The notes beneath the pieces are model-generated. The model was not told where the DNA came from, made no database searches, and was given only the letters and a program-made list of their open reading frames with translations. A program made the position numbers and the translations under genes. This document shows positions 3,390-50,202 of a DNA stretch of 64,000 nucleotides, in pieces. How positions within the stretch are numbered: the stretch's first letter is position 1; every line of letters begins with the position of its first letter. Origin of the DNA: Macrostomum lignano (lineage: Eukaryota); NCBI GenBank assembly GCA_002269645.1, contig NIVC01000403.1, forward strand, positions 1 to 64,000, in the 5' to 3' direction.

Positions 3390-3985
3390 TGCTCATCGGG
3401 GGAGGGTAATTGCTGAGATGTCAAGGCTCATTGGGGGAGGGTAATTGCTGAGATGTCAAGGCTCATTGGGGGAGGGTGATTGCTGAGATTTGCAAGGCTC
3501 ATTGGGGGAGGGTGATTGCTGAGATGTGCAAGGCTCATTGGGGGAGGGTGATTGCTGAGATGTGCAAGGCTCATTGGGGGAGGGTAATTGCTGAGATGTC
3601 AAGGCTCATTGGGGGAGGGTGATTGCTGAGATGTGCAAGGCTCATTGGGGGAGGGTAATTGCTGAGATGTCAAGGCTCATTGGGGGGGGGGTAATTGCTG
3701 AGATGTCAAGGCTCATTGGGGGAGGGTAATTGCTGAGATGTCAAGGCTCATTGGGGGAGGGTGATTGCTGAGATGTGCAAGGCTCATTAGGGGAGGGTAA
3801 TTGCTGAGATGTCAAGGCTCATTGGGGAGGGTAATTGCTGAGATGCGCAAGGCTCATTGGGGAGGGTAATTGCTGAGATGTGCAAGGCTCATTGGGGAGG
3901 GTAATTGCTGAGATGTCAAGGCTCATTGGGGGAGGGTGATTGCTGAGATGTCAAGGCTGATTGGGGTGACTGAGATGTCAAGGGT
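3390..3985. repeat. ~35-bp minisatellite, core ATTGCTGAGATGTCAAGGCT
   Basis: Direct reading. Related arrays at 10205 and 26325. Confidence 0.95.
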
Positions 3986-10120: not shown

Positions 10121-10204
10121 CTGCAGTGCGGAGGAACTGAAGCTTAGTCTGATGAAGCCAAACGCGCTCAAAATTCACGCGAGTGACACTATAGTTGTAG
10201 AGAT

Positions 10205-10572
10205 TACGGGGGCATTGCTGAGATGTCAAGGCTTACGGGGGAATTGCTGAGATGTCAAGGCTTACGGGGGAATTGCTGAGATGTCAAGGCTTACTCGGGG
10301 GGGAATTGCTGAGATGTCAAGGCTTACGGGGGAATTGCTGAGATGTCAAGGCTTACGGGGGAATTGCTGAGATGGCAAGGCTTACTGGGGGGAATTGCTG
10401 AGATGTCAAGGCTTACTGGGGGAATTGCTGAGATATCAAGGCTTACGGGAGAATTGCTGAGATGTCAAGGCTTACTGGGGGGGGGGGGATTGCTGAGATG
10501 TCAAGGCTTACTGGGGAGAATTGCTGAGATGTCAAGGCTTACTGGGGAGAATTGCTGAGATGTCAAGGCTTA
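10205..10572. repeat. ~29-bp minisatellite, core ATTGCTGAGATGTCAAGGCTTAC
   Basis: Direct reading. Confidence 0.95.
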
Positions 10573-11629: not shown

Positions 11630-12050
11630 GATCCATCCATAGGGGTCACTTGACCTCCCTAAAATAACCTCTAAAAGAATCCATAGGGGTCACTTGACCT
11701 CCCTAAAATAACCTCTAAAAGAATCCATAGGGGTCACTTGACCTCCCTAAAATAACCTCTAAAAGAATCCATAGGGGTCACTTGACCTCCCTAAAATAAC
11801 CTCTAAAAGAATCCATAGGGGTCACTTGACCTCCCTAAAATAACCTCTAAAAGAATCCATAGGGGTCACTTGACCTTTCTAAAAATAACTTTGAAAGGAT
11901 CCATAGAATTCATTTGACCTCCCTAGAAATATCTTCCAAAAAAATCCATAGGGGTCATTTGACCTCCCTAGAAATATCTTCGTAAAGATCCCTAAGAATT
12001 ATTTTACCAACATTTAAATAGATTCCTAGGGGTCACTTGTCCCCTCCCTA
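11630..12050. repeat. 44-bp minisatellite (CATAGGGGTCACTTGACCTCCCTAAAATAACCTCTAAAAGAATC)
   Basis: About 6 near-perfect and several degenerate copies. Confidence 0.93.
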
Positions 12051-12178
12051 AAAACGTTATCTCAATTTCTATTCATAGCACAACCATACAAGTAAGCTAT
12101 TGTCACATCACAGCCCAAGGATATTACATAATTTGTAATCATAACAATAATTCTGTTATACATAAATTCTGAACCAAC

Positions 12179-12283
12179 CTGAATCTGTTGCGAGCAAAGA
12201 TCGATAATTTCTAGCGCCGGCGGAATCACGTCGGGCCCGGATATTACAAAATTGTTCTCCTGATCGAACGGGCCGCCAACCAT
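12179..12283 (-). CDS. NBEA: Neurobeachin/LRBA exon 2
   Basis: TTCCAG|MVGGPFDQENNFVISGPDVIPPALEIIDLCSQQIQ|GTTGGT, resembling human 'LVGGQFDLEMNFII'. 105 nt. Confidence 0.92.
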
Positions 12284-12587
12284 CTGGAAATTGTCATTCA
12301 TTATAATAATCTAACATTATTTGAATCAAAAGTCTATTGAAAAACATTAACAAAATTAAAATAACTCTAGATTGAAACTCTAGATAGATATCACTAGATA
12401 TCAGTAGAGCTATAAGAAAGCAAAACATAGCAAAAGATGAACAACGGGTCTGCCTGCCTTTCAAAAGCAATGACAATTTTCGTGCTGAAAAATATGAGAC
12501 TATCCCTATATCCGCTGTTTCGAAGAAACCTGACTCCTAAAATTTTCCAAGAAACGAGGTTTCCCGGACTACTTGAGTAGTCCTTGC

Positions 12588-13068
12588 CTTCCGGCTGGCA
12601 ACCTTCTGGCTGGCAACCTTCGAGCTGGCAACCTTCTGGCTGGCAACCTTCTGGCTGGCAACTTTCTGGGCGGCAACCTTCCGGCTGGCAACCTTCCGGC
12701 TGGCAACCTTCCGGCTGGCAACCTTCCGGCTGGCAACCTTCCGGCTGGCAACCTTCCGGCTGGCAACCTTCCGGCTGGCAACCTTCCGGCTGGCAACCTT
12801 CCGGCTGGCAACCTTCCGGCTGGCAACCTTCCGGCTGGCAACCTTCCGGCTGGCAACCTTCCGGCTGGCAACCTTCCGGCTGGCAACCTTCCGGCTGGCA
12901 ACCTTCCGGCTGGCAACCTTCCGGCTGGCAACCTTCCGGCTGGCAACCTTCCGGCTGGCAACCTTCCGGCTGGCAACCTTCCGGCTGGCAACCTTCCGGC
13001 TGGCAACCTTCCGGCTGGCAACCTTCCGGCTGGCAATGTTCCGGCTGGCAACCTTCCAGCTGGCAAAG
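12588..13068. repeat. 15-bp minisatellite (CCGGCTGGCAACCTT)
   Basis: About 32 copies, highly homogeneous centre. Confidence 0.97.
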
Positions 13069-13166
13069 TTCGTAGACCCGACGCGTTAATCCGCTGGGCT
13101 AATCTGCCCCCCCCTACAACACACCAGCAAAGCGCCGTCAACACAATGCCGCTGCCCCGAGCTCAC

Positions 13167-13781
13167 CAAAAAGAACAGATTCTCCACAACAAACTGCCCA
13201 GTGACAGCCGGTTCAGCTTTAACCCGTTCCAACAGCGCGGCGAAGCCTTCGCTAATCCGAGTCTCGCTGTTAAACAGCAGCTGGCACCGGTTGGCCGAGG
13301 CGGCTTTTTTCTCCTTGCCTGGCGCGCCTGCGGCTCGGACCGGCGCCTGCAGCGGCGGCGGCATCGGCGCGGTCACCTCGTTGGTCGGCCGCTCCTCGGC
13401 GTCCGTAGCTTCGGTGTCCTCGACATCGCCAGCGGCACCTGCGATTGCCGCTGTTGTTGTTGTCGATTGTGGCGACGGGCTGATAGTGTCGGAACGCCCG
13501 TTGGTCATCGGCTCCTGCTGAGATGCTTCATCTTCATCATTTGCTTTTACTGTCGGTTCAGCTTCTTCTTCCACGTGCCTATTAGCGTCTTCTTCGGCGT
13601 TTTCGTCACCGTAGTCGTCGTTGTCGTCGTCAACCTGCTCTCCTTCGTCGGGATTCTCGCCGGTAGTCTCCGATTCCACGATTGCCTCCTGTTGTTGCTG
13701 GGCGGCCTCGTCAGCTGCTGCATCATCCTCGGTACCAGCTTTGATCTCCTGCTGGATCGAATTCTCAGCCTCGTCAGACAT
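13167..13781 (-). CDS. NBEA: Neurobeachin/LRBA homolog, coding exon 1 (acidic low-complexity N-terminus)
   Basis: ATG at 13781. Ends ...VVENLFFL|GTGAGC donor. The C-terminal part matches NBEA/LRBA 'IVETVFNL'. 615 nt, phase 0, joins in frame with exon 2. Confidence 0.85.
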
Positions 13782-14973
13782 TGTCTCGCCCTTGTCTGTC
13801 CCGAGATTCGGTGTTGGGATTTGAAAATAAAACCCTCTCGCTATGGATTAAGGACGATTAAGGGGGAGAGTTAGCGATTTGGTCTTGTTTGCCTTCAACT
13901 GTGTTGCTGCTTGACTGATTGTGTCATGAACAATTATGGATGTTCGAGTATTAGCTCGTATTTAGGAAATGGTCGGCATTTTCGACAACAAATAATCAAC
14001 TTGGCATATTTTAGCTTGCAAAGAACAACTAAACTGAAAGGAATTTGATTTGTATACCAATCCTTTTCACCTTAATATCTACAGTGTAATCAGCTATGTA
14101 CTTACTTAGCTTCTAATTCTAGCTGTATTGTGATATTTTCTTATAATATATAAAATTTCAAACATTAGCAAATAAAGTTTATTTAGAATTCTTCATTCCC
14201 CTTCAGGTTATTTACTAATTGTTAAGCAAGCCACTTGATATATATTACTAGAATTTAAAATCAGTTGAACTCTTGGTAGCATCGATAAATACTGACTTTA
14301 TATATAATATATATATCTAATATATAATATCTATAAATAGAAAATAGGCATAGTAAATACAAGTGTAATTATTATGCATTGCATGTTTCTACAATACAAT
14401 TATTATAAAAAACCTACACTATTTTTATTAGGTAAAAATCATATTTAAAGCATGAAAAACATTAAATGCATGAAAAACACAAACAATATTATCAATTGAT
14501 AAGCATTAATAATGTGGTATTGGTATAGCACAATTTACCTATTAGGTAAAGCAGAAAATTCTCCCAGTTTCCAAATTAAACCTATAGAAATTTCTAGAAG
14601 CTTCTACATGGTCTTATGTGAAAAGGTATATAGATACTATTGACTAATACAGAGCAACCTAAATTCAAGTTTCAGCTAATGTTACAATACCATTATATGT
14701 ACTTTAAGTACTTCATTTCATAGAAGGCTTCACAAATCCCAAGAACTTTCTGTTTTATCCAATAATTTTTTGGTATCTAGCATGCATCTACAAGTTTTCT
14801 TAAAGTATTATAATAGGGCTATTTTTTATCTATGCTTATATTATTATAATTAAAACTATTAAACAACTTATCAATTATAGTAAATATTGTTATAACTGGT
14901 ATATATTTTAAGGCACATTCATAGTCTTGTATTTATATATATATATACTAAAACACTTGTGCATTATGTATTG

Positions 14974-15758
14974 GGCTCATTCCATATAAGCATGGTCGTA
15001 ACATGACAGGTTATTTTTACTTATAAAATGAAATCTAATAATAGAATATACTAAACCAATATTTTAAATGAAAGATTATTTTGTCTAGAATATATTTATA
15101 GAGTTTCATATAGATATCATCATTAGTATATATGCTATTAAACCTTAAATGACACTTATGGTCGTAACGACAGGATTTTTGACATATAGAAACTAAAAGG
15201 TAAAAGTCTTATAACATTTTTCATTTTTGATATTTTGCAATACATTTTTAAAATTTGACTAAGAACATCTTTAGAAATCATACTCTTTTATTAGAATATA
15301 TAAACTCAAAAGGCAACAAAGATACAAAAGAAAAGGCAGCCTTATGGTCGTAACATTATGGTCGTAACATATTTTTTTCTGTCAATTCAGTAACTTTGAG
15401 GTACTAATACATTAAAAATATAATAGATTATTTGGTCACTAATGCTTTTATCTAATGATGCAAGTACTATACTTTTATCTATAGTTTGTTTCAACCTTCA
15501 AAAGCTTTCTATTTGTTTTTAAAAGGTACAAAATCTTAATGATGTCTTTTGCTTCGAAAAATGTCCAAATTTTTACAAAAATGACTTTTTGCCAATTGAT
15601 AACATACTAATCCAACATTTTACCATTCCTTTATTCTTAGATTGTATATATTGCACAATATAAACATTTGGTAAAAAATAGGCTAATTGGGCAATGGCAA
15701 GCAAAAATATTGACTTTTTTCTATTTTCCAAATATGTCCATCTTATATGGAATGAGCC
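14974..15758. mobile_element. Decayed non-autonomous DNA transposon (~785 bp)
   Basis: TIR GGCTCATTCCATATAAG(C)ATGG / CCATCTTATATGGAATGAGCC. ATT(G) on both flanks (3-4-bp TSD). Internal repeats ATGGTCGTAAC x4. Confidence 0.75.
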
Positions 15759-17276
15759 ATTGTATATTATTTATATATGTTGTCTATAAATATATAATAT
15801 TTATAAATTGAAATACTTTAATATAACTTAAAATTGAATATTCTTTAGTTTTCATGTTAAGAAATTTTATATACAAAAGTAGCTATTTATATTTTGCTTT
15901 AAATAGCAAAAAAGTTATATATGCTTATATTACTTATAGCCAATAGAATTAAACTTTGTCTTATTACTATATACATATACCACATGATTAACATAGCATA
16001 TATACAAGGGAATAGCATCAAATGTAAGCAATTCATTTGTTTAAATTTTCATCCACTTAAATGCAACTAGTCACTTTATCTACTAATAGCCAAACTAACA
16101 GCAATTTTGCTAATTAATTGCTAGAAATATTTTTAAAAATGCCCTCTTAATTTTTAGTACTAAAAGACCATTTTTAGTATATTAGAATACAAACCTTAGA
16201 GATTTAGTATATTTAGATATAAATAACAAAACCTGTTAAACTCTATACTATTATGCAATGATAATTTATATGTCAATTAAGTTTAATTACTATTTTCACA
16301 GCAAGATAGGCATAATAATAGATACATATAACAATCTAAAATTGTTACCAAAGATGTATAACTGGAATAAAACTAAACTATTAACAATAAAACAATAATA
16401 AAACTACCAAAATACCATACATTAAAGTTTGTAAACTTAGCTTAGGTCATTATTAGTTTTGTTAACAATTCCAAGAGATAAAAGTAGTATAGTATCAACT
16501 AGATTAGCCAAAATAAATGTTGGTGCTACTTATATATGCCCAATACCTATTTGACCCAACAAGAGTTTTGGCCAAGATAAGTTGCAAAAGATGGCATTTT
16601 TACAGAAAATTCTAGCACAAAAAGATATTGAAATTGTGCTACCCAGCATATTTAGGCACAATAACAAGCAGGAGAAAGGGGGAATCTAACACAATATGAC
16701 GCAAGACAAAACCTTTTAGCAAGACAATATTTTTGCAAACAGAAAATTAGCACTTTTTTGCTCATGTATTGATGGCTTTTTAAATTAAAATATATTAAAC
16801 TTGTATTTGTTAACTTGTAACTTGTATGCATATTAACTTATAAAATTGAAAATATTTTGTATTCTTGTTTTTTTATAAAAAAGTTTTAGCACATAGTCCA
16901 AGCAAACTTTTTTGATAGAATTTGTTCTAGTGTAGGGCCCAATCAAACTTTTTTTGATAAGATTTGTTCTTGCACAAGCATGCCATGATCCTGACTATGG
17001 ATTTCGATCTTTGATCTTAATTATTTTAAATTTTGGGATATAGTAGACCTGAAAATACCTTTTTTAATTGCATAATAAACCCTTATTACCAGATAATTTG
17101 GTTGCTTTTTATGCTTTTTAGAAATATTATTTACAGTGCAAAATTTACACATAAAAATATTTGTTTAAATGCTCTTTTACAAGCTTGAAAAAACATAAAG
17201 CTTGAAATTTGTGCTTAAAAATGAACTTTTTTCATCCTTTTTCTATTTCACAATAACTCTTATGCATGGTTCTATA

Positions 17277-17306
17277 ACGTGCATGCCAGGTGCGCATGTG
17301 TACTAG
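17277..17306 (+). mobile_element. Helitron-like 3' terminus (eroded hairpin + CTAG)
   Basis: ACGTGCATGCC-A-GGTGCGCATGT then GTACTAG. Becomes a perfect 11-bp stem if four TG/CA are restored to CG. Confidence 0.5.
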
Positions 17307-18540
17307 CTACTATTTTCTCAGGAGTGATGCATACCAATTGTGCATGCCTAATTTTGGCATGCAAGGCCAATGCATGCCCAAATTTTCGGGCATATACTAC
17401 ATGATCCAGAGTGTGGAATAAATGAACTTAATATTACAAGAAGCAGAAATTATTTTCTCTGCCAGAGATAAACATGTATTAGGATTCTATTATCTTGCTT
17501 TATTAAACAAATGTTTTGTTAAGTTCTAGACTATAGGCTTTGCTAAAGTGGACTTTTCAAAATGGTCTTTTGCTGAAATGGCCTTTACCAAAGTGGTCTT
17601 TTGCCAAAATGGTCAGCAGTGTCAGCATCTATCCTTATTCATTTATTTAAACTCAAAGATTCTTCTATTTAAAAAAGCTACAAGAAAAGGGACCTAACTA
17701 AAATTAAAGTTAAAATTTGGTAGTGTTACAATTTTTCCGAGTGTACATATCATGTGCAATATATTTGCTGGTGTAACTTTAATTTATAGCATAAGGGGGC
17801 ATTTTTTCTGGCATACTGTGTACAGATTAGAGAGTATGGCAATCAGGCAATATGACCCTACGGCCTAAGAATACAGTAACAATGCATAGTATTATGTAGT
17901 ATTATCTACTTATAGAAATATAAAATAGCCAAAGTATAGTTCAGATAAAATATTTCAAACACAAAGCAAAAAGAGCCTAAAACAAAATTTAAAAATTGAC
18001 ATTATATGTGATGAATGCAATGTCACTGACACTGAGAAGTGAGAATGTCTAATTAAACTGTATCTGAACGAATAGAAAGATAAAACATAAGAAAAGTTAA
18101 CTTTATTTTAATTACTAAAGTATCAAAATTGTATAGCTATTATTAAATAAGCATTAAAAACATGCAGAACATTAAGAGCAATAAAACCAAGGCGGCAGCA
18201 AAGCGTCGCGTATATGAGGTCGATTTCCAAGAAAAAATATTTCCTTCTCTCAAGTTAAATAATAATTTTTATATGTGATATAACAAAGGATAAATCAAGG
18301 TTTGATACCAAATATATTTTACGATAATTTATGAGCAACAAGAGCTTTTTAAACTTAATTAAACGTAATAAAAAGCATAAAAGTTATTTTCTTTACAAAT
18401 TCAGGCACTTTTAAAAGTGGTATTCGTCAACATAAATTTTAAATAAAGTTGTTAGGAAATCGATTGTTTAAGTCAAATTTTAACATTAGTCTATAAGCTG
18501 ATTTTCTCATCTGCTAGAACTCTTATCTTAAATTTTAGTT

Positions 18541-18697
18541 ATGGCAGAAGATCCATTGTCTGATTTTCTTAGCCGAGAGCAGGAACACATGAATGAGCTA
18601 GGGGATGACTTCGTCTCAGGACAAAATCAGGATCAAGAAGAACAAAATCATGAACAAAACAACGAGTTTGTTGAAGAGGATTGGAACGGCATTGGCG
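18541..18697 (+). CDS. Clc: Clathrin light chain, coding exon 1
   Basis: MAEDPLSDFLSREQEHMNELGDDF resembles the CLC N-terminal 'EDPAAAFLAQQESEIAGIEND'. Donor G|GTAGGT, phase 1 matches exon 2. An acceptor-like TTTTAG lies 2 nt before the ATG. Confidence 0.8.
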
Positions 18698-19062
18698 GTA
18701 GGTTATGTAGTTTTTTGCATTGTTGCTTGATTTTAATATAAATTCAAATAAGGTATTAATTATTGTTTTTTGAATTTTACATAGGCCTAAAAGGCTAATC
18801 ATAACAATGAGAATGGCAATGTCAATGAAGTCTAGATAGGCCTAGTGTATAATGTTTTATCTTAGTAACAAAGTGAATTTTATGTGCTTCATTTTGAAAC
18901 ATGGTTAATAGAAATAGTACCATGCCTTATAGCAACATTTCATTTTTGGTAACAAAGCTGTTTGTTTGCAAAAAAAAATCATTTAATACATAGGCCTGAT
19001 AATCAGGATTATTATTGGCCCTATGCCATAGTCCAGATGGGTGTGGGTCGTTTTGTCTGCTG

Positions 19063-20689
19063 CCATAGTTAGGAAGGCAGTCAATTTCACCAAATTTTCT
19101 GGTGCAAATTGGCCATTTCTCTGGTCAAAACAAACTTGGCGCATTAAATGCAAAAGGAAAAATGACAGCCTATAACTTTGTGCAGTTGGCGCCTATAAAA
19201 GTCAGGAAGATGGTGTTTTACTCGGAAAATTCCAGCATACACAGGGAACTTTTGGGCCAATTTTAGCGTACATGGTGTACCACGGTTTAGAGAAAGTACC
19301 CCATGGCGTGCAATGGCGTGCCACAACACACAATTGTATGCCGTGCCACTGTGGGCGTGGGGCCCTGCCTACCCACAATATTCTGAATCCTAATGCATAA
19401 AATTTATTTTAAAAAACTGTTTTTTTAAAACTGAAATTGAAAAAAAAAGAAAAAATGATTTTTCTGGTACTAATTTTCTTTCGTTAAAGTCATTGAACTT
19501 TCATCACAAATGTTGTGCAATCGTGCCCTTTCTCGCCCTCCTGCCCCGCCCCAACCCTCCAGTCTGCCCCACCCCTCCAATCAATAAACGCGTACGCCGA
19601 TCATGCCACCCTGCCCCACCTCCCCTGCTGTACCATACATTTGTTCTTAAGTTATATTCATGTATGCATAGGACCAATGAAAAATATATAGTTGCTGTCT
19701 GGAGGGCAGACTCCTCCCTTGCGTGCGTTGGTCCACCTCCATTGGCTATTGACTAAAACCACTCGTCGATCTACCATAAAAAGTGCATGGCGAACTGCAT
19801 CGGCTATGGTGTGTAAGTTCGTGTTTGCGAGTTACTGTCCTTTTTCTGCTTCTCCCTAGGGCGCGGGATAGGAGCTCTGACTGGGGACCTGGGGGTCGCA
19901 GCTTCCCGACAGGTTAAAGCTGTAGGCGTTGCTCCGGAGGACGGGGCTCACAACACAAATGAAAACTTTGTTAAAGTTTGACTTTTACATTATTTTAAAC
20001 TTCCATTATTATTTAATGGATTATTATCGAAACCCATTCACGTGCACTGCTAGGTTGACGGTCATTTTGTCTGCCGCCAGTTTGTCTGCTACCCTTTCGT
20101 CTGCATGAATACGATACAGTTGTTTCATCTGCCAACAAATAGTAAAGTTTTAATAAGTAAGGCGACAGACGAAAAGACCACGTGGCGCACCCACTGCTAC
20201 CCCTACCCCCCCCCCCTGGTCCATCGGCATACCACCACGTTCCAATCTTGGCGCACACGGCGTACCACTTTTTTTACCGACTTTTTATTCCGGCGTACCC
20301 GTGCCATCATCCTGACTATGGGTTGGCGCATGGGATAGATTCCTTTGATTATTTTTTTGTATTTTTGGATATTTTGTTGTTACAATTATAGTAACTTTAA
20401 CAACAATCGTTTATTTACCTAATTAATTTTATGGAACTTTTACAAAAATTGTTATTTTTTATGAACATTAAAGACTACTCAAAGTTCAAATTCAAATTTC
20501 CATTTATTGTTTGCTGTTTGCCATTTAATCTTATTGCTGAATCATCATTTTTATATTGTTATAAATAGCATTTTAACTATTTTAAGCATTGGCACATGGT
20601 GTAAGGAGAAATAATTGCTTTGGCACATGGCGCATTTGAAAAAAGGGGAAATTTATTCCAGCATACATGGCGCACTTTCCTAACTATGG
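19063..20689. mobile_element. TIR element with TGGCGCA-type subterminal repeats (CACTA/EnSpm-like, tentative)
   Basis: CCATAGTTAGGAAGG (19063) inverted to CTTTCCTAACTATGG (20675-20689). Many (T)TGGCGCA/ATGGCG motifs inside. TSD not identified. Confidence 0.5.
19511..19955. mobile_element. Solo LTR (445 bp), Gypsy-like
   Basis: Termini TGTTGTG...CACAACA. 4-bp TSD CAAA on both sides. GC-rich and CpG-retaining, with an internal AATAAA. Confidence 0.75.
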
Positions 20690-22659
20690 GTCTACTGGAG
20701 GTGCATTCTAGGGTAGACATTTTGTCTGCTATTGTGTCTAATGAAAACAATATTTATTTGGTATAAAGCACTAAAGTATATATTGGTATAAAATCAATAA
20801 AGAGCCGTATTTGCTACAAATAAGCATCTATTTTTTACCATTTAGTGCTACTTTTGTTAAGATAAATGACAAATGTAGACGGTCAGTAGTTGGAAGTTTT
20901 AAATATACATTTGAAAGAAATTTTGTACAAAGTCTGAAATCAATGTAGTTTCTAGTAGAAGCTATTATGCTTTTCTTATTATGCTTTTGGAGACCATGAT
21001 ATGCAAAGACCACTCTTGAATTGTTAAGTTCTTTTGGAACTCTTGGGTTCTTAGCTTTTCTCAAATTTATTAATTATGTTTAAGAGAGTCGAGCTCTACT
21101 GGCTCAAGCAGCCGTTAGCTGCCTACACAGCCATAGACAAAAATAAACTGAATTACGCTCAAAATACAAGTGAAGCTTGCAATAAGTTTGCTATGCTCAA
21201 CCCACAGCAGAAGCATTAGCAAATATAGATTAAAATAAGAGTATTTATATAGAAGATTAAATATAAGATTAAATATAAGATTAACATAAATAGAAGACAG
21301 AAAGGCTATAATAAAAATTCACATGAAATACATTAGGGAATTATAGTCAAAATATTAAAATTAATGTTTAAAATCACAGTTAAAATAAAAGCTAAATTTA
21401 TATAGCGCCATCTCTTCAAATTATGTTATGTAGCATATAAACTAACTATATTAAATTGGTTTTCTTTGTTTTGAATATTAGCAACTAAATTATGCACAGA
21501 TTAACTAACTAATCATATAATACATCATATGTCATATTAATAATGCTAGCAAACAAACTTATAGTCGACAAAATTATTGCATCCTATCCAGATCATGCTA
21601 GCTATATACTAGAAATAATTTGGCTTGCATTCTTCACTTTATCCCAAATTATGCCAAGCAACAAATGGCCCCAAGCCAAGGCATTATAGAAAAATAAATA
21701 GTTATAAAACCTTAGCATATTTAACATTAATTTAGATATCCTAGGGCTTTGTCTTTTATAAATATTCTGCCACTAGGCTACCAAAGTTGTGCTAGGGGTA
21801 TTCTACTTCTTTGCTAATTTCATTGCTTTCACCAAGTTGTCATAGACATATTTTGTAATATAATACTTTGATGCACTTTAAATATACTGTATAATATATA
21901 GGGACTTCAGTGAGACTTTGAAAGGCAAAAGCTTTGAATTCAGTTTTTTTTCATAACAAAAATAGATAGGCTATGTTATTATGAACATAAAAAGTGCTTA
22001 CTTTAATTGTTTGGTTCAGTAATAAAAAGTTATTAACATTTTATTTTTTAAAATTCATTTTTTAAATGGCCAAAATGTATTATGGAATGTAACTTTTTTA
22101 AAATAAAAGTTGAGGATTTTTTTATTTTAATGTGAAGAACTTTTTTATTTGAAAAGTTGACTATTGAGTTTAGTGTCATTTTATTTTTTTAAGCTCTATA
22201 TCAAATTTTATCAAGAGTGAGTCTTGGATTTCAAGACTTTTTATATTCAATTTGTCTTGCAATTTAGTATAGAAAAAGCTTCAAAATGCTTCCCCCTTTG
22301 GATTAAAAAATATCTGGATTTTTCATATTTTAAATGATAAAAGTTATATCTATATATATTTTGATATAACTGAAAACTCTATGTGTGACAGCAAATTCTT
22401 CCCAATTTTTTTGCTCTGTGTATATAGTTTTGTATATTGAACACATTTTTTTAATCCTTTTTTCTTCCTCTTTATCAGAAATTGTAAAAAAAATTATGCA
22501 TATAGAACTATAATATAATAAATAAATTTTATTAAAAACATTAAGCATCAAATTATTGTAGTATTTATCTATCTTTATTTTCTACAATGAAAACTTTTGA
22601 CTTTACATTATAATTGTACCTATTTTCCATGACCTCTTCTTTGTAAACTATATATACAT

Positions 22660-22815
22660 GTGCAACCTTGGGAATCACTTGGCTGTTTATATTGGCAACA
22701 TACACATGTAAGTCGCTATTGGCTGAGAGCAGTCATGTGACTACTATTCTGTCCAATAGCAACTTATGTATGTGTGTTGCCAATAGAAACAGCTGGGTGA
22801 ATCCCTAGGTTGCGC
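22660..22815. mobile_element. Palindromic (foldback) MITE remnant, ~70-bp arms
   Basis: Left arm GTGCAACCTTGGGAATCACTTGGCTGTTT..ATTGGCAACA..TAAGTCGCTATTGG is inverted at 22752-22815. Centre AGTCATGTGACT. Confidence 0.8.
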
Positions 22816-23284
22816 CCAAGCATGAAACTATACTAAATTAATGAACTTTCGAAGGTCAAGTTATATTTGATTTTATTGCATTTTTATTCTAGATTACAGA
22901 GTATTATACTTTTTTAATTCAATTTAGTTTTAGAAAATTTTATACTTAAAGTAGCAATGTTTTAGCATATTCAAAAAAGTTTCCTACATTTTACCAATGT
23001 CATGAAAGTCCCTATACTATGTATTGGTAATATCTTATATAAAGTATATTGTATATTATGTACTATTGGCCTAAGTAGTCTTATGGCACTATACTTATCC
23101 TATTTTATGTATTATGTCTACTCCTATTGATGATTTCTCTCAGTTAGGGTGGTGCTACTACTAGCAAAAACTATCACCTGTTCTAATAAATTGCTATTAA
23201 TTTTTACACATTAGCTAAAAAATAAGACTTGAAAGTTGTTCAAAATGAGTATCAATATTCCCCTTTCCACTGGTTGAATGCCAG

Positions 23285-23584
23285 GCGGTGACCAGCAGCC
23301 GCCAGCTGAGGAGAACGGTCCCCAGGACACCTATTCGGCCATCCGCTCGGCCGACACTGAGCAGGGCGAGCCAGAAAAGATTCGCCAATGGCGCATAGAA
23401 TTCGAAGCTAAAATTGCCGAGAAAGACGAGGCCGAGGCCAAAGCTATTAACGAATGGCGCGAGTCTGCCAAGCACGAGCTGGAGACCTGGGCCAAGAATC
23501 ACGAGGAGCAGATGGCTAAGAATAAGACTGGCAATCGGGAGACTCAGGAAGCTTTCATTCGGGAGCGCGATGAAAGCCTGCCTG
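23285..23584 (+). CDS. Clc: Clathrin light chain, exon 2 (heavy-chain-binding helix)
   Basis: GCCAG|...NGPQDTYSAIRSAD...EPEKIRQWR...AKHELETW...NKTGNRETQEAFIRERDESLPG|GTAAGA. 300 nt, phase 1/1. Confidence 0.95.
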
Positions 23585-23726
23585 GTAAGACGGCTATTCG
23601 GGTCATGCGATGATTTTTGGGGGCGTAAGACAGAAAGATGAGTCATGGCTTCTTCGCCATTCTCTTGAATATTTTGCAAAGCCATTTTAGAAATCTTCAG
23701 GTTTGGCCGCCGTTTTAACCCGCCGG

Positions 23727-23922
23727 CCTCCCAGATCCTCAGTTGCTGGGCCAGCCTCCCAGATCCTCAGCTGCTGGGCCAGCCTCCCAGATCCTCAGCT
23801 GCTGGGCCAGCCTCCCAGATCCTCAGTTGCTGGGCCAGCCTCCCAGATCCTCAGTTGCTGGGCCAGCCTCCCAGATCCTCAGTTGCTGGGCCAGCCTTCC
23901 AGATCCTCAGTTGCTGGGCCAG
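23727..23922. repeat. 28-bp minisatellite (GCCTCCCAGATCCTCAGTTGCTGGGCCA)
   Basis: About 7 copies in clathrin light chain intron 2. Confidence 0.95.
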
Positions 23923-24062
23923 CCACCAACGCTAAGCAGCCACTTTGTAAAAGAGAGTCGCATTGTCAGTGCTATTTTGGGCACCCATTGCTGATAATTT
24001 GGAACCCAAGCTGTAATATCGCACTAACGAACTCAAAAGCAACACAATAATTGCCCGCGCAG

Positions 24063-24080
24063 GTGCCCATACTGAGCCAG
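24063..24080 (+). CDS. Clc: Candidate 18-nt in-frame microexon of clathrin light chain (adds AHTEPG)
   Basis: Branch-point-like CACTAAC (24022-24028), AG at 24061-62, exon GTGCCCATACTGAGCCAG, donor GTATGC. Phase 1/1, no stop. Confidence 0.55.
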
Positions 24081-24799
24081 GTATGCCGCCTCGACGGCCT
24101 GTCATGATTTGTCTGTTTCAGTTGATCCCTATTCTCGTGAAATTGTTTGGTTTCTGTTTAGTTCAATCGATAGACCTGCGCCCTATAGTGAGACACTGCA
24201 GTCCAACGGCGCCACCGTTTAACAGTGCCAGCTGGGATGCTAATGAATTATTTTACCTATTTAACATGGCCTTATTTGTTGTTATTTATCCTAAATGTGC
24301 GTCGCATGTTCTAATCATATTAATGAGGACAGTAAAGGTTTTTAGGCTTAGGAAGGCAAAATAATGCATGCATGAACACACATTTAATAGTCGGATTTTT
24401 ATGTTAAATAGCAAAGTACGGCCAAGCCTGTATTGGGTCCGATTGTATGTTAACACGAATTGTACAGATTTAAAGTGCACGCACAACAAAAAGTATTATT
24501 GTTATTCTGCCAATGTATAATTTTTTTAAGTTGGCAAACCCTACGTTAAAGATGCGCCCTAACAACATTGTCAATTTATTGTTTCTGTGGTCGCATGCTT
24601 TTTTGCTACTCGTAGTAGTATATCAAATAGCGTATTTTTTAAATCGTGGCTGTTATTGGTACTTTTTACTAATCGCTTGGTAGTTACGATTAGGGTTATT
24701 TATTATTTATGTTCAGTCATGATTTACAATAGAGAGACTTGGCTTTTGATCGTCTGGTTCCCTTGTATTTATTATTGCCAAGGGACTTATCAGCTTGGT

Positions 24800-25365
24800 T
24801 TTGTTGTCCAGTTTGTGAAGTGTCCAGTTTGTGAAGTGTCCAGTTTGTGAAGTGTCCAGTTTGTGAAGTGTCCAGCTTGTGAAGTGTCCAGTTTGTGAAG
24901 TGTCCAGTTTGTGAATTTTCCAGTTTGTGAAGAGTCCAGTTTGTGAAGAGTCCAGTTTGTGAATTTTCCAGTTTGTGAAGTGTCCAGTTTGTGAAGTGTC
25001 CAGTTTGTGAAGAGTCCAGTTTGTGAAGTGTCCAGTTTGTGAAGTGTCTAGTTTGTGAAGTGTCCAGTTTGTGAAGAGTCCAGTTTGTGAAGTGTCCAGT
25101 TTGTGAATTGTCCAGTTTGTGAAGTGTCCAGTTTGTGAAGAGTCCAGTTTGTGAATTTTCCAGTTTGTGAATTTTCCAGTTTGTGAAGTGTCCAGTTTGT
25201 GAAGAGTCCAGTTTGTGAAGTGTACAGTTTGTGAAGAGTCCAGTTTGTGAAGTGTCCAGTTTGTGAAGAGTTCAGTTTGTGAATTTTCCAGTTTGTGAAT
25301 TTTCCAGTTTGTGAAGTGTCCAGTTTGTGAAGAGTCCAGTTTGTGAAGCATCCAGTTTGTGAAGG
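24800..25365. repeat. 16-bp minisatellite (CCAGTTTGTGAAGTGT)
   Basis: About 35 copies upstream of the last clathrin light chain exon. Confidence 0.95.
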
Positions 25366-26324: not shown

Positions 26325-27540
26325 AAGTTGAATTGCTGAGGTGTCAGGCTTGGCGAGTTGCTGAGATGTCAGGCTTTGGGGGAATTGCTGAGATGTCAGG
26401 CTTGGGGGATTGCTGAGATGTCAGGCTTGGATGGATTGCTGAGATGTCAGGCTTTGGGGGGATTGCTGAGATGTCAGGCTTGGGGGGATTGCTGAGATGT
26501 CAGGCTTGGGGGGATTGCTGAGATGTCAGGCTTGGGGGGATTGCTGAGATGTCAGGCTTGGGGGGATTGTTGAGATGTCAGGCTTGGGGGGATTGCTGAG
26601 ATGTCAGGCTTGGGGGGATTGCTGAAATGTCAAGGCTGACTGGGGAATTGCTGAGATGTCAGGCTTTGGGGGAATTGCTGAGATGTCAAGGCTGACTGGG
26701 GAATTGCTGAGATGTCAGGCTTTGGGGAATTGCTGAGATGTCAGGCTTTGGGGGAATTGCTGAGATGTCAGGCTTTGGGGGGATTGCTGAGATGTCAGGC
26801 TTGGGGGGATTGCTGAGATGTCAGGCTTGGGGGGATTGCTGAAATGTCAAGGCTGACTGGGGAATTGCTGAGATGTCAGGCTTTGGGGGAATTGCTGAGA
26901 TGTCAAGGCTGACTGGGGAATTGCTGAGATGTCAGGCTTTGGGGAATTGCTGAGATGTCAGGCTTTGGGGAATTGCTGAGATGTCAGGCTTTGGGGGAAT
27001 TGCTGAGATGTCAGGCTTTGGGGGGATTGCTGAGATGTCAGGCTTGGGGGGATTGCTGAGATGTCAGGCTTGGGGGGATTGCTGAGATGTCAGGCTTAGC
27101 GGGAAAGCTGAGATGTCAGGCTTAGTGGGATTGCTGAGATGTCAGGCTTAGCGGGAAAGCTGAGATGTCAGGCTTAGTGGGATTGCTGAGATGTCAGGCT
27201 TAGGGGGAATGCTGAGATGTCAGGCTTAGGGGGAATGCTGAGATGTCAGGCTTGGGGGGATCGCTGAGATGTCAGGCTTAGGGGGAATGCTGAGATGTCA
27301 GGCTTAGGGGGAATGCTGAGATGTCAGGCTTAGGGGGAATGCTGAGATGTCAGGCTTAGGGGGAATGCTGAGATGTCAGGCTTAGGGGGAATGCTGAGAT
27401 GTCAGGCTTAGGGGGAATGCTGAGATGTCAAGGCTTGCGGGGGATTGCTGAGATGTCAAGGCTTGCGGGGGAATGCTGAGATGTCAAGGCTTGCGGGGGA
27501 ATTGCTGAGATGTCAGGCTTGGGGGGATTGCTGAGATGAG
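26325..27540. repeat. 26-29-bp minisatellite, core ATTGCTGAGATGTCA(A)GGCT
   Basis: Direct reading. Same family as 3390 and 10205. Confidence 0.95.
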
Positions 27541-40545: not shown

Positions 40546-41169
40546 ATTCCCTCACAAAAGGTTCCCATAATCGCCAGGCACAAATTTCTATTTTACAGCG
40601 CCTTCTCCTGATCTCCCTTCTCCCTCCGGTGCGCAGTGATCCCATGCAGTTATTACCGCGGCTTGTCAAATCCCCCCCCCCCCAGCAGCGCCTTGTCCAG
40701 ATCGGTCCCCCACCTGGAGTCGGCAGCCGCCGTCACAAAAAGAGCTGCAAAGCGGCGCGCACTTCAAAGAACACGCGGAGGCCCCTGTGGCAAACCAAAA
40801 TCCCGAAGGTATGAGGAGGAGAGAGAGGAGATCACTTTGAGTTTGGGGTCCGGCCGCGGCTACCGGGGGTGGCGTGGGAATTAAGAGACGAACTCATAAC
40901 GAATCCCGCCGTTCAATTCCCGTCGGTAAAATTTCCTACGAGCCATTGGGACGGTTAATCCTAGTCTCAGATCTCAACCCCCCCCCCGCGTATGGAACTC
41001 ATTGTTCCGTCTTTTAACTACAAGCATGATTATAGTTTCTGGAGAATGCACCTTTACTAGATTTTTTGTTAAGCCCAAAATTTATTGCAGCATATCGTAT
41101 AGTCGTATTTGTGCATTGAGATCGACTTAAAGAGCAGAAGATTATCCAGTGACCTGGATTTAGTAGTAT

Positions 41170-44100
41170 TCAAAGGACCAGGGTATAGTAGCTTGCAGAG
41201 GACCACCAAAGGACCAGGGTATAGTAGCTTGCAGAGGACCACCAAAGGACCAGGGTATAGTAGCTTGCAGAGGACCACCAAAGGACCTGGGTATAGTAGC
41301 TTGCAGAGGACCACCAAAGGACCAGGGTATAGTAGCTTGCAGAGGACCACCAAAGGACCAGGGTATAGTAGCTTGCAGAGGACCACCAAAGGACCTGGGT
41401 ATAGTAGCTTGCAGAGGACCACCATAGGACCAGGGTATAGTAGCTTGCAGAGGACCACCAAAGGACCAGGGTATAGTAGCTTGCAGAGGACCACCAAAGG
41501 ACCAGGGTATAGTAGCTTGCAGAGGACCACCAAAGGACCAGGGTATAGTAGCTTGCAGAGGACCACCAAAGGACCTGGGTATAGTAGCTTGCAGAGGACC
41601 ACCAAAGGACCAGGGTATAGTAGCTTGCAGAGGACCACCAAAGGACCTGGGTATAGTAGCTTGCAGAGGACCACCAAATTACCTGGGTATAGTAGCTTGC
41701 AGAGGACCACCAAATTACCAGGGTATAGTAGCTTGTAGAGGACCAATAAATTACCTGGGTATAGTAGCTTGCAGAGGACCACCAAAGGACCAGGGTATAG
41801 TAGCTTGCAGAGGACCACCAAAGGACCAGGGTATAGTAGCTTGCAGAGGACCACCAAATTACCTGGGTATAGTAGCTTGCAGAGGACCACCAAATTACCT
41901 GCGTATAGTAGCTTGCAGAGGACCACCAAAGGACCAGGGTATAGTAGCTTGCAGAGGACCACCAAAGGACCAGGGTATAGTAGCTTGCAGAGGACCACCA
42001 AAGGACCAGGGTATAGTAGCTTGCAGAGGACCACCAAAGGACCAGGGTATAGTAGCTTGCAGAGGACCACCAAATTACCTGGGTATAGTAGCTTGCAGAG
42101 GACCACCAAAGGACCAGGGTATAGTAGCTTGCAGACGACCACCAAAGGACCAGAGTATAGTAGCTTGCAGAGAACCACCAAAGGACCAGGGTATAGTAGC
42201 TTGCAGAGGACCACCAAAGGACCAGGGTATAGTAGCTTGCAGAGGACCACCAAATTACCTGGGTATAGTAGCTTGCAGAGGACCACCAAAGGACCAGGGT
42301 ATAGTAGCTTGCAGACGACCACCAAAGGACCAGAGTATAGTAGCTTACAGAGGACCACCAAATTACCTGGGTATAGTAGCTTGCAGAGGACCACCAAATT
42401 ACCAGGGTATAGTAGCTTGCAGAGGACCACCAAATTACCTGGGTATAGTAGCTTGCAGAGGACCACCAAAGGACCAGGGTATAGTAGCTTGCAGAGGACC
42501 ACCATAGGACCAGGGTATAGTAGCTTGCAGAGGACCACCAAAGGACCAGGGTATAGTAGCTTGTAGAGGACCACCAAAGGACCAGGGTATAGTAGCTTGC
42601 AGAGGACCACCAAAGGACCAGGGTATAGTAGCTTGCAGAGGACCACCAAAGGACCAGGGTATAGTAGCTTGCAGAGGACCACCAAAGGACCTGGGTATAG
42701 TAGCTTGCAGAGGACCACCAAAGGACCAGGGTATAGTAGCTTGCAGAGGACCACCAAAGGACCAGGGTATAGTAGCTTGCAGAGGACCACCAAAGGACCA
42801 GGGTATAGTAGCTTGCAGAGGACCACCAAAGGACCTGGGTATAGTAGCTTGCAGAGGACCACCAAAGGACCAGGGTATAGTAGCTTGCAGAGGACCACCA
42901 AAGGACCTGGGTATAGTAGCTTGCAGAGGACCACCATAGGACCTGGGTATAGTAGCTTGCAGAGGACCACCAAAGGACCAGGGTATAGTAGCTTGCAGAG
43001 GACCACCAAAGGACCAGGGTATAGTAGCTTGCAGAGGACCACCAAAGGACCAGGGTATAGTAGCTTGCAGAGGACCACCAAAGGACCTGGGTATAGTAGC
43101 TTGCAGAGGACCACCAAAGGACCAGGGTATAGTAGCTTGCAGAGGACCACCAAAGGACCTGGGTATAGTAGCTTGCAGAGGACCACCAAAGGACCTGGGT
43201 ATAGTAGCTTGCAGAGGACCACCAAATTACCAGGGTATAGTAGCTTGCAGAGGACCACCATAGGACCAGGGTATAGTAGCTTGCAGAGGACCACCAAAGG
43301 ACCAGGGTATAGTAGCTTGCAGAGGACCACCAAAGGACCAGGGTATAGTAGCTTGCAGAGGACCACCAAAGGACCAGGGTATAGTAGCTTGCAGAGGACC
43401 ACCAAAGGACCTGGGTATAGTAGCTTGCAGAGGACCACCAAAGGACCAGGGTATAGTAGCTTGCAGAGGACCACCAAAGGACCAGGGTATAGTAGCTTGC
43501 AGAGGACCACCAAAGGACCAGGGTATAGTAGCTTGCAGAGGACCACCAAAGGACCTGGGTATAGTAGCTTGCAGAGGACCACCAAATTACCTGGGTATAG
43601 TAGCTTGCAGAGGACCACCAAAGGACCAGGGTATAGTAGCTTGCAGAGGACCACCAAAGGACCTGGGTATAGTAGCTTGCAGAGGACCACCAAATTACCT
43701 GGGTATAGTAGCTTGCAGAGGACCACCAAAGGACCAGGGTATAGTAGCTTGCAGAGGACCACCAAAGGACCAGGGTATAGTAGCTTGCAGAGGACCACCA
43801 AATTACCTGGGTATAGTAGCTTGCAGAGGACCACCAAATTACCTGCGTATAGTAGCTTGCAGAGGACCACCAAATTACCAGGGTATAGTAGCTTGTAGAG
43901 GACCAATAAATTACCTGGGTATAGTAGCTTGCAGAGGACCACCAAAGGACCAGGGTATAGTAGCTTGCAGAGGACCACCAAAGGACCTGGGTATAGTAGC
44001 TTGCAGAGGACCACCAAATTACCTGGGTATAGTAGCTTGCAGAGGACCACCAAAGGACCAGGGTATAGTAGCTTGCAGAGGACCACCAAAGGACCTGGGT

Positions 44101-44280
44101 ATAGTAGCTTGCAGAGGACCACCAAATTACCTGCGTATAGTAGCTTGCAGAGGACCACCAAAGGACCAGGGTATAGTAGCTTGCAGAGGACCACCAAAGG
44201 ACCAGGGTATAGTAGCTTGCAGAGGACCACCAAATTACCAGGGTATAGTAGCTTGCAGAGGACCACCAAAGGACCTGAGT
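41170..44280. repeat. 36-bp minisatellite (GGACCAGGGTATAGTAGCTTGCAGAGGACCACCAAA)
   Basis: About 86 copies, the source of the 1185-aa pseudo-ORF. Confidence 0.97.

Positions 44281-50171: not shown

Positions 50172-50202
<31 letters not shown>

What the first reader, a model, noticed from the sequence alone, without database searches (positions are those of the whole stretch)
13960..23270. Sharply bounded ~9.3-kb AT-rich, CpG-eroded domain between and within two divergent housekeeping genes
Composition drops abruptly (by eye roughly 25-30% GC versus ~45-50% outside) just past the neurobeachin start and recovers at clathrin light chain exon 2. Inside, CG is scarce and GCATGC/TG/CA motifs are abundant (e.g. 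17330-17400). Two internal palindromes show mismatches mostly or entirely explained by CG>TG/CA, and there are also CC>TT changes. Minisatellites just outside keep dense CpGs. Inference: a long-lived, locally targeted germline cytosine methylation/deamination domain (or a RIP-like process) acting on a transposon nest rather than on repeats in general. This is the best candidate for an undescribed system in the window.
Basis: partly seen in the sequence, partly recalled or inferred. Interest (0 to 1): 0.72.

Follow-up and report, generated by a model that had tools for sequence, protein, structure and literature searches.

The report
AT-rich, CpG-poor block in flatworm
A 9-kb stretch between and inside two housekeeping genes of the flatworm Macrostomum lignano is much poorer in G+C and in CpG than its surroundings, most likely an old, locally methylated compositional domain rather than a new kind of genome-defence system.

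Summary
The window is Macrostomum lignano contig NIVC01000403.1. From about 13.9 to 23.28 kb GC falls to 27.5%, against 47% in the non-repetitive flanks. CpG o/e is 0.28 against 0.81, GpC o/e is 1.85 against 1.22, and tandem repeats cover 1.5% against 48%. The edges are sharp (200 bp or less). They lie just upstream of the neurobeachin-like start codon and at the acceptor of clathrin-light-chain exon 2. Two other contigs carrying homeologous copies show the same domain with collinear junctions, so it is not a misassembly and it predates the homeolog split.

CpG-specific loss fits local germline 5mC, since the species keeps DNMT1 and DNMT3. CpG decay alone can explain about 4.5 to 9 of the 19.5 missing GC points. 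CLC exon 1, inside the domain, has lowered GC3. The CLC promoter keeps conserved CpGs although it is only 26% GC. The indices for Neurospora-type RIP are not met, no duplicated targets were found, and transitions show no strand-clustering. The flank is at equilibrium near 43% GC, so two substitution regimes sit side by side.

Whether the process is still running, and how common such blocks are in this genome, could not be tested. I rate it a moderately interesting new member of a known kind.

The parts
13086..13781 (-). First coding exon of the neurobeachin/LRBA-like gene (GC 59%, GC3 0.63). It forms the left boundary of the domain.
   Evidence: ORF and translation. The homeolog gene is annotated as 2711 aa. 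GC drops about 120-300 bp upstream of the ATG.
13900..18100 (.). AT-rich, CpG-poor intergenic spacer shared by the two divergent genes.
   Evidence: GC is 0.18-0.36 and CpG o/e 0-0.5 per 200 bp. Only 7 CpGs lie in the ancestral sequence between 14284 and 18068.
14972..15757 (.). MITE-like insertion specific to this haplotype. It is 26% GC, has 17-bp terminal inverted repeats GGCTCATTCCATATAAG and four TATGGTCGTAAC motifs.
   Evidence: It is absent from L002 and L003, where the empty site is seen. It carries 6 of the 13 CpGs between 14284 and 18068.
16963..17400 (.). Eroded fragment related to the end of the young hAT-like element, followed by the GCATGC cluster (17281-17377).
   Evidence: A 38-nt match at 76% identity. 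All three CpGs of the young copy are TG/CA-type in the old copy.
18101..18540 (+). Promoter-proximal region of the clathrin light chain gene. It is AT-rich (25.7% GC) but CpG-replete (o/e 1.24), with a CpG cluster at 18193-18221.
   Evidence: Composition. Eight of 9 CpGs are conserved in all three homeologs despite about 5% local divergence.
18541..18697 (+). Clathrin light chain exon 1, inside the domain (GC 43%, GC3 0.40).
   Evidence: The exon 1 plus exon 2 splice reproduces PAA83836.1 at 100%. GC3 differs from exon 2 at p=0.0056.
18698..23284 (+). Clathrin light chain intron 1, AT-rich and CpG-poor apart from the young insertion.
   Evidence: No CpG at all from 21567 to 22713.
19193..20321 (.). 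Young non-autonomous hAT-like element. It is 46% GC with CpG o/e 0.83, has imperfect terminal inverted repeats (..AGTCAGGA[A/T]GATGG) and an 8-bp target-site duplication GTTGGCGC.
   Evidence: Absent from both homeologs, where the empty site CAGTTGGCGCAGGGG is seen.
22662..22813 (.). Foldback (MITE-like) palindrome with 61-nt arms that are 82% complementary.
23285..23586 (+). Clathrin light chain exon 2 (GC 57%, GC3 0.65, CpG o/e about 1). It forms the right boundary of the domain.

Best explanation
The block is an old, kilobase-scale compositional domain of the Macrostomum lignano genome. It covers the spacer between two divergently transcribed genes plus the first intron (and first exon) of the clathrin light chain gene. 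Two local processes keep it different from its neighbours.

(1) CpG-specific loss. This is best explained by germline cytosine methylation confined to the domain and sparing the CLC promoter. That would make it one methylated compartment of a mosaic methylome.

(2) A substitution regime whose GC-to-AT versus AT-to-GC rate ratio is about twice that of the flanks. It affects coding and non-coding sequence alike and holds GC near 27%. The cytosines that survive are preferentially those preceded by G. That pattern fits spontaneous deamination that depends on local strand opening and so reinforces itself in AT-rich DNA.

Shown here: the composition, the boundaries, the age relative to the homeolog split, the different equilibrium in the flank, the spared promoter and the exon 1 shift. 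Inferred: methylation itself, the deamination mechanism, and whether either process still operates.
For: - Composition contrast and its significance.
- All three homeolog contigs carry the same domain, with single alignments crossing both junctions.
- CpG is 0.28 while GpC is 1.85 inside the domain. Flank CpGs are not hypermutable (5 of 24 C>T at CpG, equal to their share).
- Flank substitutions polarised on three lineages give S>W 37 and W>S 34, so GC*=0.43, close to the present 0.446. A GC* of 0.27 is rejected (p=0.0027).
- ts:tv is 167:79 in the domain against 49:46 in the flank (p=0.006).
- CLC exon 1 GC3 is 0.40 against 0.65 in exon 2 (p=0.0056).
- The promoter-proximal 440 bp are 25.7% GC but have CpG o/e 1.24, and 8 of 9 CpGs are conserved in the homeologs. 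The rest of the ancestral domain has CpG o/e 0.21.
- Retention of C by its 5' neighbour runs G 1.85 > C 1.15 > A 0.88 > T 0.74. Transitions per C run in the opposite order, T 0.082 > A 0.075 > C 0.066 > G 0.048. From my own knowledge of the SantaLucia parameters, this is the order of nearest-neighbour stacking stability.
- DNMT1 and DNMT3 are retained and 5mC is low-level in this species (PMC11292947, PMC9246332, PMC10658182).
Against: - There are no methylation data for this locus.
- Only two haplotypes exist in the domain (L002 and L003 differ by 0.15%), so no substitution could be polarised.
- The 31 CpGs private to one haplotype can be explained almost wholly by gains from the large TpG/CpA pool (and my estimate). 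CpG depletion may therefore be a relic rather than an active process.
- The higher homeolog divergence in the domain (3.5-3.8% against about 1%) also holds for A<->T transversions (0.58% against 0.17%). Genealogies differ between regions, and the left flank is 0% diverged. That divergence therefore cannot be read as a higher mutation rate.
- Only one locus was seen, so prevalence in the genome is unknown.
- The 5'-neighbour differences in transitions per C are small.
Confidence: 0.5

Rival explanations
1. The flanks are the unusual part. GC-biased gene conversion, including exchange between the three homeologous subgenomes, together with recent minisatellite expansion keeps genic and repeat-rich DNA near 45% GC and low in divergence. 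The domain is a conversion cold spot sitting at the AT-biased mutational equilibrium. Its CpG deficit is an old or weak genome-wide effect that only shows where nothing counteracts it.
For: - The left flank (11697-13546) is identical in all three contigs, and divergence begins where GC falls.
- L003 switches from L002-like to window-like near 21.3-22 kb, which shows exchange between homeologs.
- Divergence and GC are inversely related across 500-bp windows.
- All substitution classes, not only C>T, are about 3.3 times higher in the domain.
- Flank GC* is 0.43.
- Tandem repeats cover 48% of the flanks against 15% genome-wide (PMC5730564).
Against: - Flank CpGs are not over-represented among S>W changes (5 of 24). 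They are therefore not hypermutable-but-rescued, and CpG loss does differ locally.
- ts:tv differs between the regions (p=0.006).
- The edges are sharp to 200 bp or less and coincide with exon edges, which is tighter than typical conversion-driven gradients (my knowledge).
- Chimeric or collapsed assembly could mimic homogenisation. 36% of the assembly length lies in chimeric scaffolds (PMC10733133).
Confidence: 0.28
2. The domain is AT-rich because it is built from intrinsically AT-rich transposons (a transposon nest). Its composition was inherited at insertion and not produced in place.
For: - A MITE-like element of 26% GC entered this haplotype after the homeolog split (14972-15757).
- A foldback element lies at 22662-22813, and eroded hAT-like ends lie at 16963-17000.
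- There have been three lineage-specific insertions in about 7.3 kb since the split.
Against: - CLC exon 1 shares the AT shift (GC3 0.40).
- The young MITE has weaker signatures (CpG 0.46, GpC 1.38) than the old sequence (0.21, 1.88).
- The other young insertion is GC-rich and the L-lineage insertion is a minisatellite block.
- No internal repeat families were found in most of the domain.
Confidence: 0.1
3. A RIP-like or AID/APOBEC-like enzymatic hypermutation system targets this locus and deaminates cytosines well beyond CpG.
For: - The GC deficit is far larger than CpG decay can give.
- TpC/GpA is depleted (0.74) and GpC retained (1.85).
- Transitions are enriched.
- C<->T differences before A are the most numerous class (71 of 150).
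Against: - (CpA+TpG)/(ApC+GpT) is 1.33, whereas RIP gives 1.03 or less (my knowledge of the indices).
- No duplicated sequence is present to trigger RIP.
- GC and AT skews are about 0.
- There is no strand-coordinated clustering of transitions (87 runs against 85.5 expected).
- G/C alleles are split 83:88 between the haplotypes.
- The young GC-rich insertion is untouched (CpG o/e 0.83).
- RID/Masc-type enzymes are fungal (my knowledge).
Confidence: 0.05
4. The block is an assembly chimera or contaminant DNA.
For: [quoted passage not shown]
Against: Three independent contigs share the block, with single alignments spanning both junctions. A spliced gene runs across it, with exon 1 inside and exon 2 outside, and the splice reproduces the annotated protein.
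Confidence: 0.01

Closest known systems
Methylated compartments of mosaic invertebrate methylomes, such as Ciona and other invertebrates (Tweedie 1997 and Suzuki 2007, from my knowledge; reviewed in PMC9246332 and PMC11292947)
   Same: A kilobase-scale, sharply bounded block with a CpG deficit lies next to blocks with near-expected CpG. DNMT1 and DNMT3 are present in the species.
   Different: Classic mosaic methylation sits on the bodies of housekeeping genes, exons included. Here exon 2 and the sequence after it have CpG o/e about 1. The depleted block is the intergenic spacer plus intron 1. It is also 20 points poorer in GC and has a strong GpC excess.
Vertebrate-style landscape: CpG-poor methylated bulk DNA with an unmethylated CpG-retaining promoter
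   Same: The CLC promoter-proximal 440 bp keep conserved CpGs (o/e 1.24) inside CpG-depleted surroundings (o/e 0.21).
   Different: The 'island' is not GC-rich (26% GC). The depleted region is only 9 kb and the rest of the window is not depleted.
AT-isochores made by repeat-induced point mutation in fungi, such as Leptosphaeria maculans and Neurospora (my knowledge)
   Same: Sharply bounded AT-rich blocks interleaved with GC-equilibrated gene-rich DNA. Genes inside or beside them drift towards AT.
   Different: There are no duplicated targets and CpA is not depleted. The blocks here are much smaller. The host is an animal and no RID homologue is known in it.
Isochore-like GC heterogeneity, GC-biased gene conversion, and the melting-dependent cytosine deamination model (Fryxell & Zuckerkandl 2000; honeybee GC-poor regions; my knowledge)
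   Same: GC3 of a coding exon follows the surrounding non-coding GC. Adjacent regions have different equilibrium GC. Retention of C follows the stacking stability of its 5' neighbour.
   Different: The scale is 9 kb, not hundreds of kilobases, and the boundaries are sharp to 200 bp or less. No recombination data are available.

Membership tests
Repeat-induced point mutation (Neurospora type) | CpA>TpA bias: (CpA+TpG)/(ApC+GpT) of 1.03 or less, with TpA/ApT raised | tested here: not met
   (CpA+TpG)/(ApC+GpT) = 1.17/0.88 = 1.33. TpA/ApT = 0.96/0.95 = 1.0.
Repeat-induced point mutation (Neurospora type) | Acts on duplicated sequence of a few hundred bp or more | tested here: not met
   No long direct or inverted repeat families in the domain. 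The longest is a 61-nt palindrome, and the two young insertions have no second copy in the 120 kb in hand.
Repeat-induced point mutation (Neurospora type) | RID/Masc1-type cytosine methyltransferase homologue in the genome | not testable with these tools
   The M. lignano proteome could not be searched; only exact look-ups and three capped searches were available.
Methylated compartment of a mosaic methylome | CpG deficit specific to CpG, not shared by GpC, and confined to the block | tested here: met
   Inside: CpG 0.28, GpC 1.85. Flank: CpG 0.81, GpC 1.22.
Methylated compartment of a mosaic methylome | DNMT1 and DNMT3 present in the species | not tested
   Taken from the literature only (PMC11292947, PMC9246332, both citing Wasik 2015).
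Methylated compartment of a mosaic methylome | 5-methylcytosine actually present on the block in germline DNA | not testable with these tools
   No bisulfite or nanopore data were accessible. The Wasik 2015 paper is not held.
Methylated compartment of a mosaic methylome | Present-day CpG>TpG hypermutability inside the block but not outside | tested here: inconclusive
   Outside there is none (5 of 24 C>T at CpG). Inside, CpG turnover is 53% against 17% for GpC (OR 5.4, p=7e-8). Gains from TpG/CpA could account for this, and the changes cannot be polarised.
Methylated compartment of a mosaic methylome | Methylation centred on the transcribed bodies (exons) of housekeeping genes | tested here: not met
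   CLC exon 2 and the downstream sequence, and the neurobeachin-like exon 1, have CpG o/e of about 0.9-1.3.
Isochore / gBGC compositional domain | Synonymous-site GC of embedded exons tracks the regional GC | tested here: met
   GC3 is 0.40 for exon 1 inside the domain, against 0.65 and 0.63 for the exons outside.
Isochore / gBGC compositional domain | Different equilibrium GC in adjacent regions | tested here: inconclusive
   Flank GC* is 0.43, and 0.27 is rejected at p=0.0027. The domain GC* could not be measured independently because there is no polarisation.
Isochore / gBGC compositional domain | Scale of 100 kb or more with gradual transitions | tested here: not met
   The block is 9.3 kb and its edges are 200 bp or less.
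AID/APOBEC-type editing | Strand-coordinated clusters of C>T in a fixed 5' context | tested here: not met
   Runs of Y-type and R-type transitions number 87 against 85.5 +/- 6.3 expected. Skews are about 0. TpC is depleted (0.74), but ApC is depleted too.
hAT superfamily (the young insertion at 19193-20321 only) | 8-bp target-site duplication and short terminal inverted repeats | tested here: met
   GTTGGCGC is duplicated and the empty site is present in L002. No transposase ORF is present, so the element is non-autonomous.

The most novel reading that the evidence does not exclude
M. lignano directs its sparse DNMT1/DNMT3 methylation to discrete AT-rich intergenic and first-intron compartments, not to gene bodies or its abundant minisatellites. 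Combined with context-dependent deamination of unmethylated cytosine, this drives those compartments into self-reinforcing, minisatellite-free AT islands. That would be an animal counterpart of fungal AT-isochores that needs no repeat recognition.
Probability: 0.12. Interest if true: 0.7.

Novelty: new member of a known kind. Interest (0 to 1): 0.38.

Why it matters
[quoted passage not shown] M. lignano is one of the few flatworms that kept DNMT1 and DNMT3.

A sharply bounded block that is CpG-depleted but GpC-enriched, next to CpG-replete exons, introns and minisatellites, makes a concrete and cheaply testable prediction about where germline methylation has acted. It points to an intergenic and first-intron compartment that spares an AT-rich promoter, not to gene bodies.

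The locus also shows two non-coding substitution regimes (equilibrium GC about 43% and about 27%) less than 200 bp apart. It is a compact natural test case for separating methylation, melting-dependent deamination and biased gene conversion.

If such blocks turn out to be common in the genome, they matter in practice for promoter choice in transgenesis and for short-read coverage bias in this model species. If this is a single locus, it is a curiosity.

Tried and rejected
The young hAT-like element and the MITE have no other copy in the window or the homeolog loci. Only a 38-nt old fragment matched, which is too little to tabulate.
- Polarising domain substitutions with three homeologs. L002 and L003 differ at only 8 of 5240 sites in 13.9-21.3 kb, and L003 is never the odd one out in 21.3-23.3 kb. 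The domain therefore has only two haplotypes.
- Reading the 3.7-fold higher homeolog divergence as a higher mutation rate. I rejected this because genealogies differ between regions and A<->T transversions rise as well.
- Sampling other M. lignano loci to measure prevalence. One protein search was swamped by a low-complexity N-terminus. The next did not return the M. lignano neurobeachin-like protein. An exact look-up of the window's zinc-finger gene returned only the window's own contig.
- Wasik 2015, which holds the bisulfite data, is not in the library.
- Rfam and tRNA scans of the window found nothing.
- The 'age only' model, in which the flanks are young and still decaying. I rejected it because the flank is at equilibrium (S>W 37, W>S 34).
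- Mitochondrial-insert or contaminant ideas. I rejected them because a spliced nuclear gene runs through the block and all homeologs share it.

Full report
**Identity of the sequence.** The spliced product of 18541-18697 plus 23285 onward is 100% identical to Macrostomum lignano clathrin light chain PAA83836.1 (BOX15_Mlig005152g2; Pfam PF01086). An exact look-up places it on NIVC01000403.1 of assembly GCA_002269645.1, and the window equals positions 1-64000 of that contig. On the minus strand a large gene starts at 13781. Its N-terminal exons resemble the ConA-like region of neurobeachin/LRBA proteins, and its homeolog is annotated as 2711 aa. The name 'neurobeachin' is plausible but only partly verified.

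**The observation.**
- GC per 200 bp falls from 0.51-0.69 to 0.18-0.36 at about 13.9 kb and jumps back to 0.57 at 23.3 kb.
- Without CLC exon 1 and one young insertion the block is 8025 bp at 27.5% GC. It has 43 CpG where 151.7 are expected (o/e 0.28; P=7.5e-17 even against the flank's 0.81) and 280 GpC (o/e 1.85).
- The non-repetitive flanks (28,240 bp) have GC 47.0%, CpG 0.81 and GpC 1.22.
- Tandem repeats cover 1.5% of the block and 48% of the rest of the window. The genome average is 15% (PMC5730564).
- The right edge is the acceptor of CLC exon 2. The left edge lies 120-300 bp upstream of the other gene's ATG.
- Two details are weaker than stated. In the 22662-22813 palindrome about 8 of 12 arm mismatches are transitions, but only one is a clear CG/TG difference. 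The minisatellite on the right side has almost no CpG.

**Not an artefact, and old.**
- The two other homeologous copies of the locus (L002 on NIVC01000835.1, L003 on NIVC01000401.1) show the same AT-rich block between the same exons.
- Single alignments run across both junctions: window 11697-14347 and 21259-23924 against L002.
- The block therefore predates the divergence of the subgenomes described in PMC10733133.
- Since that split this haplotype has gained two insertions. One is an AT-rich MITE-like element (14972-15757). The other is a GC-rich, CpG-replete non-autonomous hAT-like element (19193-20321) with 8-bp target duplication GTTGGCGC and the empty site present in L002.
- The other lineage gained, or this one lost, a 3.7-kb minisatellite block.

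**What CpG loss can and cannot explain.**
- CpG is depleted 6.6-fold relative to GpC inside the block. That is the classical signature of CpG-specific loss.
- In the right flank the three homeologs form three lineages. Majority-rule polarisation there gives 24 C>T changes, of which 5 are at CpG. That equals the share of CpG among C/G sites (about 21%), so flank CpGs are not hypermutable.
- The species retains DNMT1 and DNMT3 and has low-level 5mC, but its pattern is undescribed (PMC11292947, PMC9246332, PMC10658182). Local germline methylation is therefore the simplest reading.
- Flank-like DNA holds only about 0.81 x 0.235^2 = 4.5% CpG. Converting every CpG once lowers GC by about 4.5 points, or 9 if both bases go, out of a 19.5-point gap.
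- AT-richness and CpG loss are separable. The 440 bp upstream of the CLC start codon are 25.7% GC yet have CpG o/e 1.24, and 8 of 9 of their CpGs are conserved in all three homeologs. The rest of the ancestral block has o/e 0.21.
- That picture resembles an unmethylated promoter inside a methylated compartment.

**A regional substitution regime.**
- CLC exon 1, inside the block, has GC3 0.40. Exon 2 has 0.65 (p=0.0056) and the neighbouring gene's exon 1 has 0.63. Whatever lowers GC acts on all sequence in the block and not only on transposons.
- In the right flank S>W and W>S substitutions are balanced (37 and 34). This gives GC*=0.43 against the present 0.446, and an equilibrium of 0.27 is rejected (p=0.0027). 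The flanks are therefore not merely young DNA on the way to AT-richness.
- ts:tv is 167:79 in the block against 49:46 in the flank (p=0.006).
- A roughly two-fold higher S>W to W>S rate ratio is enough to account for 27% against 43% GC.
- The frequency of C by its 5' neighbour, relative to expectation, is G 1.85 > C 1.15 > A 0.88 > T 0.74. Transitions per C between the haplotypes run the other way, T 0.082 > A 0.075 > C 0.066 > G 0.048.
- From my own knowledge, that is the order of nearest-neighbour stacking stability (GC > CC > AC > TC). It fits deamination that depends on local strand opening, as in the Fryxell-Zuckerkandl model. This step is an inference.

**What could not be settled.**
- Homeolog divergence is 3.5-3.8% in the block against about 1% in the flanks. 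A<->T transversions are raised as well (0.58% against 0.17%).
- The left flank is identical in all three contigs. L002 and L003 differ by only 0.15% in the block, and L003 switches partner near 21.3-22 kb.
- Genealogies therefore differ between regions, through inter-homeolog exchange or assembly chimerism. Divergence cannot be read as mutation rate, and block substitutions cannot be polarised.
- CpG dinucleotides turn over much faster than GpC in the block: 31 private and 28 shared, against 48 private and 234 shared (OR 5.4, p=7e-8). In the flanks turnover is 2-6% against 2-3%.
- Gains from the 20-fold larger TpG/CpA pool could supply nearly all the private CpGs. An active process and a relic are therefore both possible.
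- G/C alleles at transition sites are split 83:88 between the haplotypes, and transitions show no strand-coordinated runs (87 against 85.5 expected).

**Rivals.**
- The main rival reverses the roles. Biased gene conversion and homogenisation keep the genic, repeat-rich flanks GC-rich and little diverged, while the block is a cold spot at mutational equilibrium. The coincidence of the zero-divergence tract with the GC edge favours it. The lack of CpG hypermutability in the flank and the ts:tv difference argue that the block also has something of its own.
- An origin from intrinsically AT-rich transposons is contradicted by exon 1, and by the young MITE having weaker signatures than the old sequence.
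- RIP-like or APOBEC-like hypermutation is disfavoured. (CpA+TpG)/(ApC+GpT) is 1.33, there are no duplicated targets, there is no skew and no clustering, and the young GC-rich insertion is intact.

**Comparison with known kinds and verdict.**
- The block behaves most like one methylated compartment of a mosaic invertebrate methylome, with an isochore-like AT shift superimposed.
- It differs from the textbook mosaic pattern because the depleted unit is a 5' spacer plus first intron, not the exonic gene body. It also differs in its strong GpC excess and its freedom from minisatellites.
- It fails the defining tests for RIP and for APOBEC-type editing. It is far smaller and sharper than an isochore.
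- I found no description of such blocks in M. lignano in the searchable literature, but I could not measure how common they are.
- I rate it a real, well-bounded feature of moderate interest: a new member of a known kind and a good target for existing bisulfite data, not an undescribed system.

Noticed in passing
window 1-64000 (for example 41171-44275, 52220-56149, 58564-59721): Tandem repeats (periods 4-47 bp) cover 41% of the window, and 48% outside the AT-rich block. The published genome average is 15%. Several arrays create long spurious ORFs, for example 1185 aa at 41069-44626.
   Followed up: partly
window 3391-3966, 10204-10572, 26332-27538: One minisatellite family (unit about ATTGCTGAGATGTCAAGGC..GGGGG, 26-35 bp) recurs at three separate places. 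This suggests a dispersed array, possibly carried by a transposon.
   Followed up: no
window 11697-13546 against L002 and L003; window 21336-25347 against L003: The three homeolog contigs have no substitutions between them over 1.85 kb of the neurobeachin-like 5' region. L003 changes from L002-like to window-like (99.2% identity) near 21.3-22 kb. This means either gene conversion or recombination between subgenomes, or chimeric or collapsed assembly.
   Followed up: partly
L002 2662-6392 (and L003 3197-6402): A 3.7-kb block made mostly of about 24-nt minisatellite units lies inside the homeologs' AT-rich spacer and is absent from the window. It has GC 37%, CpG o/e 0.37 and GpC o/e 1.65.
   Followed up: partly
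window 60037-60515: This is the only other AT-rich, CpG-poor patch in the window (GC 32%, CpG o/e 0.25, GpC 1.26). It sits between two inverted arrays of the same 16-nt unit (59728-60014 and 60516-60839), like the core of a large foldback element.
   Followed up: no
window 50072-51154 (-): A single-exon C2H2 zinc-finger gene (360 aa) in a 66-68% GC island. Its upstream region is GC-rich, so not all promoters here are AT-rich.
   Followed up: partly
window 14995-15370: The motif TATGGTCGTAAC occurs four times inside the young MITE-like element and holds most of that element's CpGs. It may be a subterminal binding-site repeat.
   Followed up: no
window 18193-18230: The block GGCGGCAGCAAAGCGTCGCGTATATGAGGTCG is fully conserved, about 320 bp upstream of the CLC start codon. 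It is a candidate core promoter with a TATA-like element. L002 has a 9-bp duplication (AGCAAACTG) inside it.
   Followed up: partly
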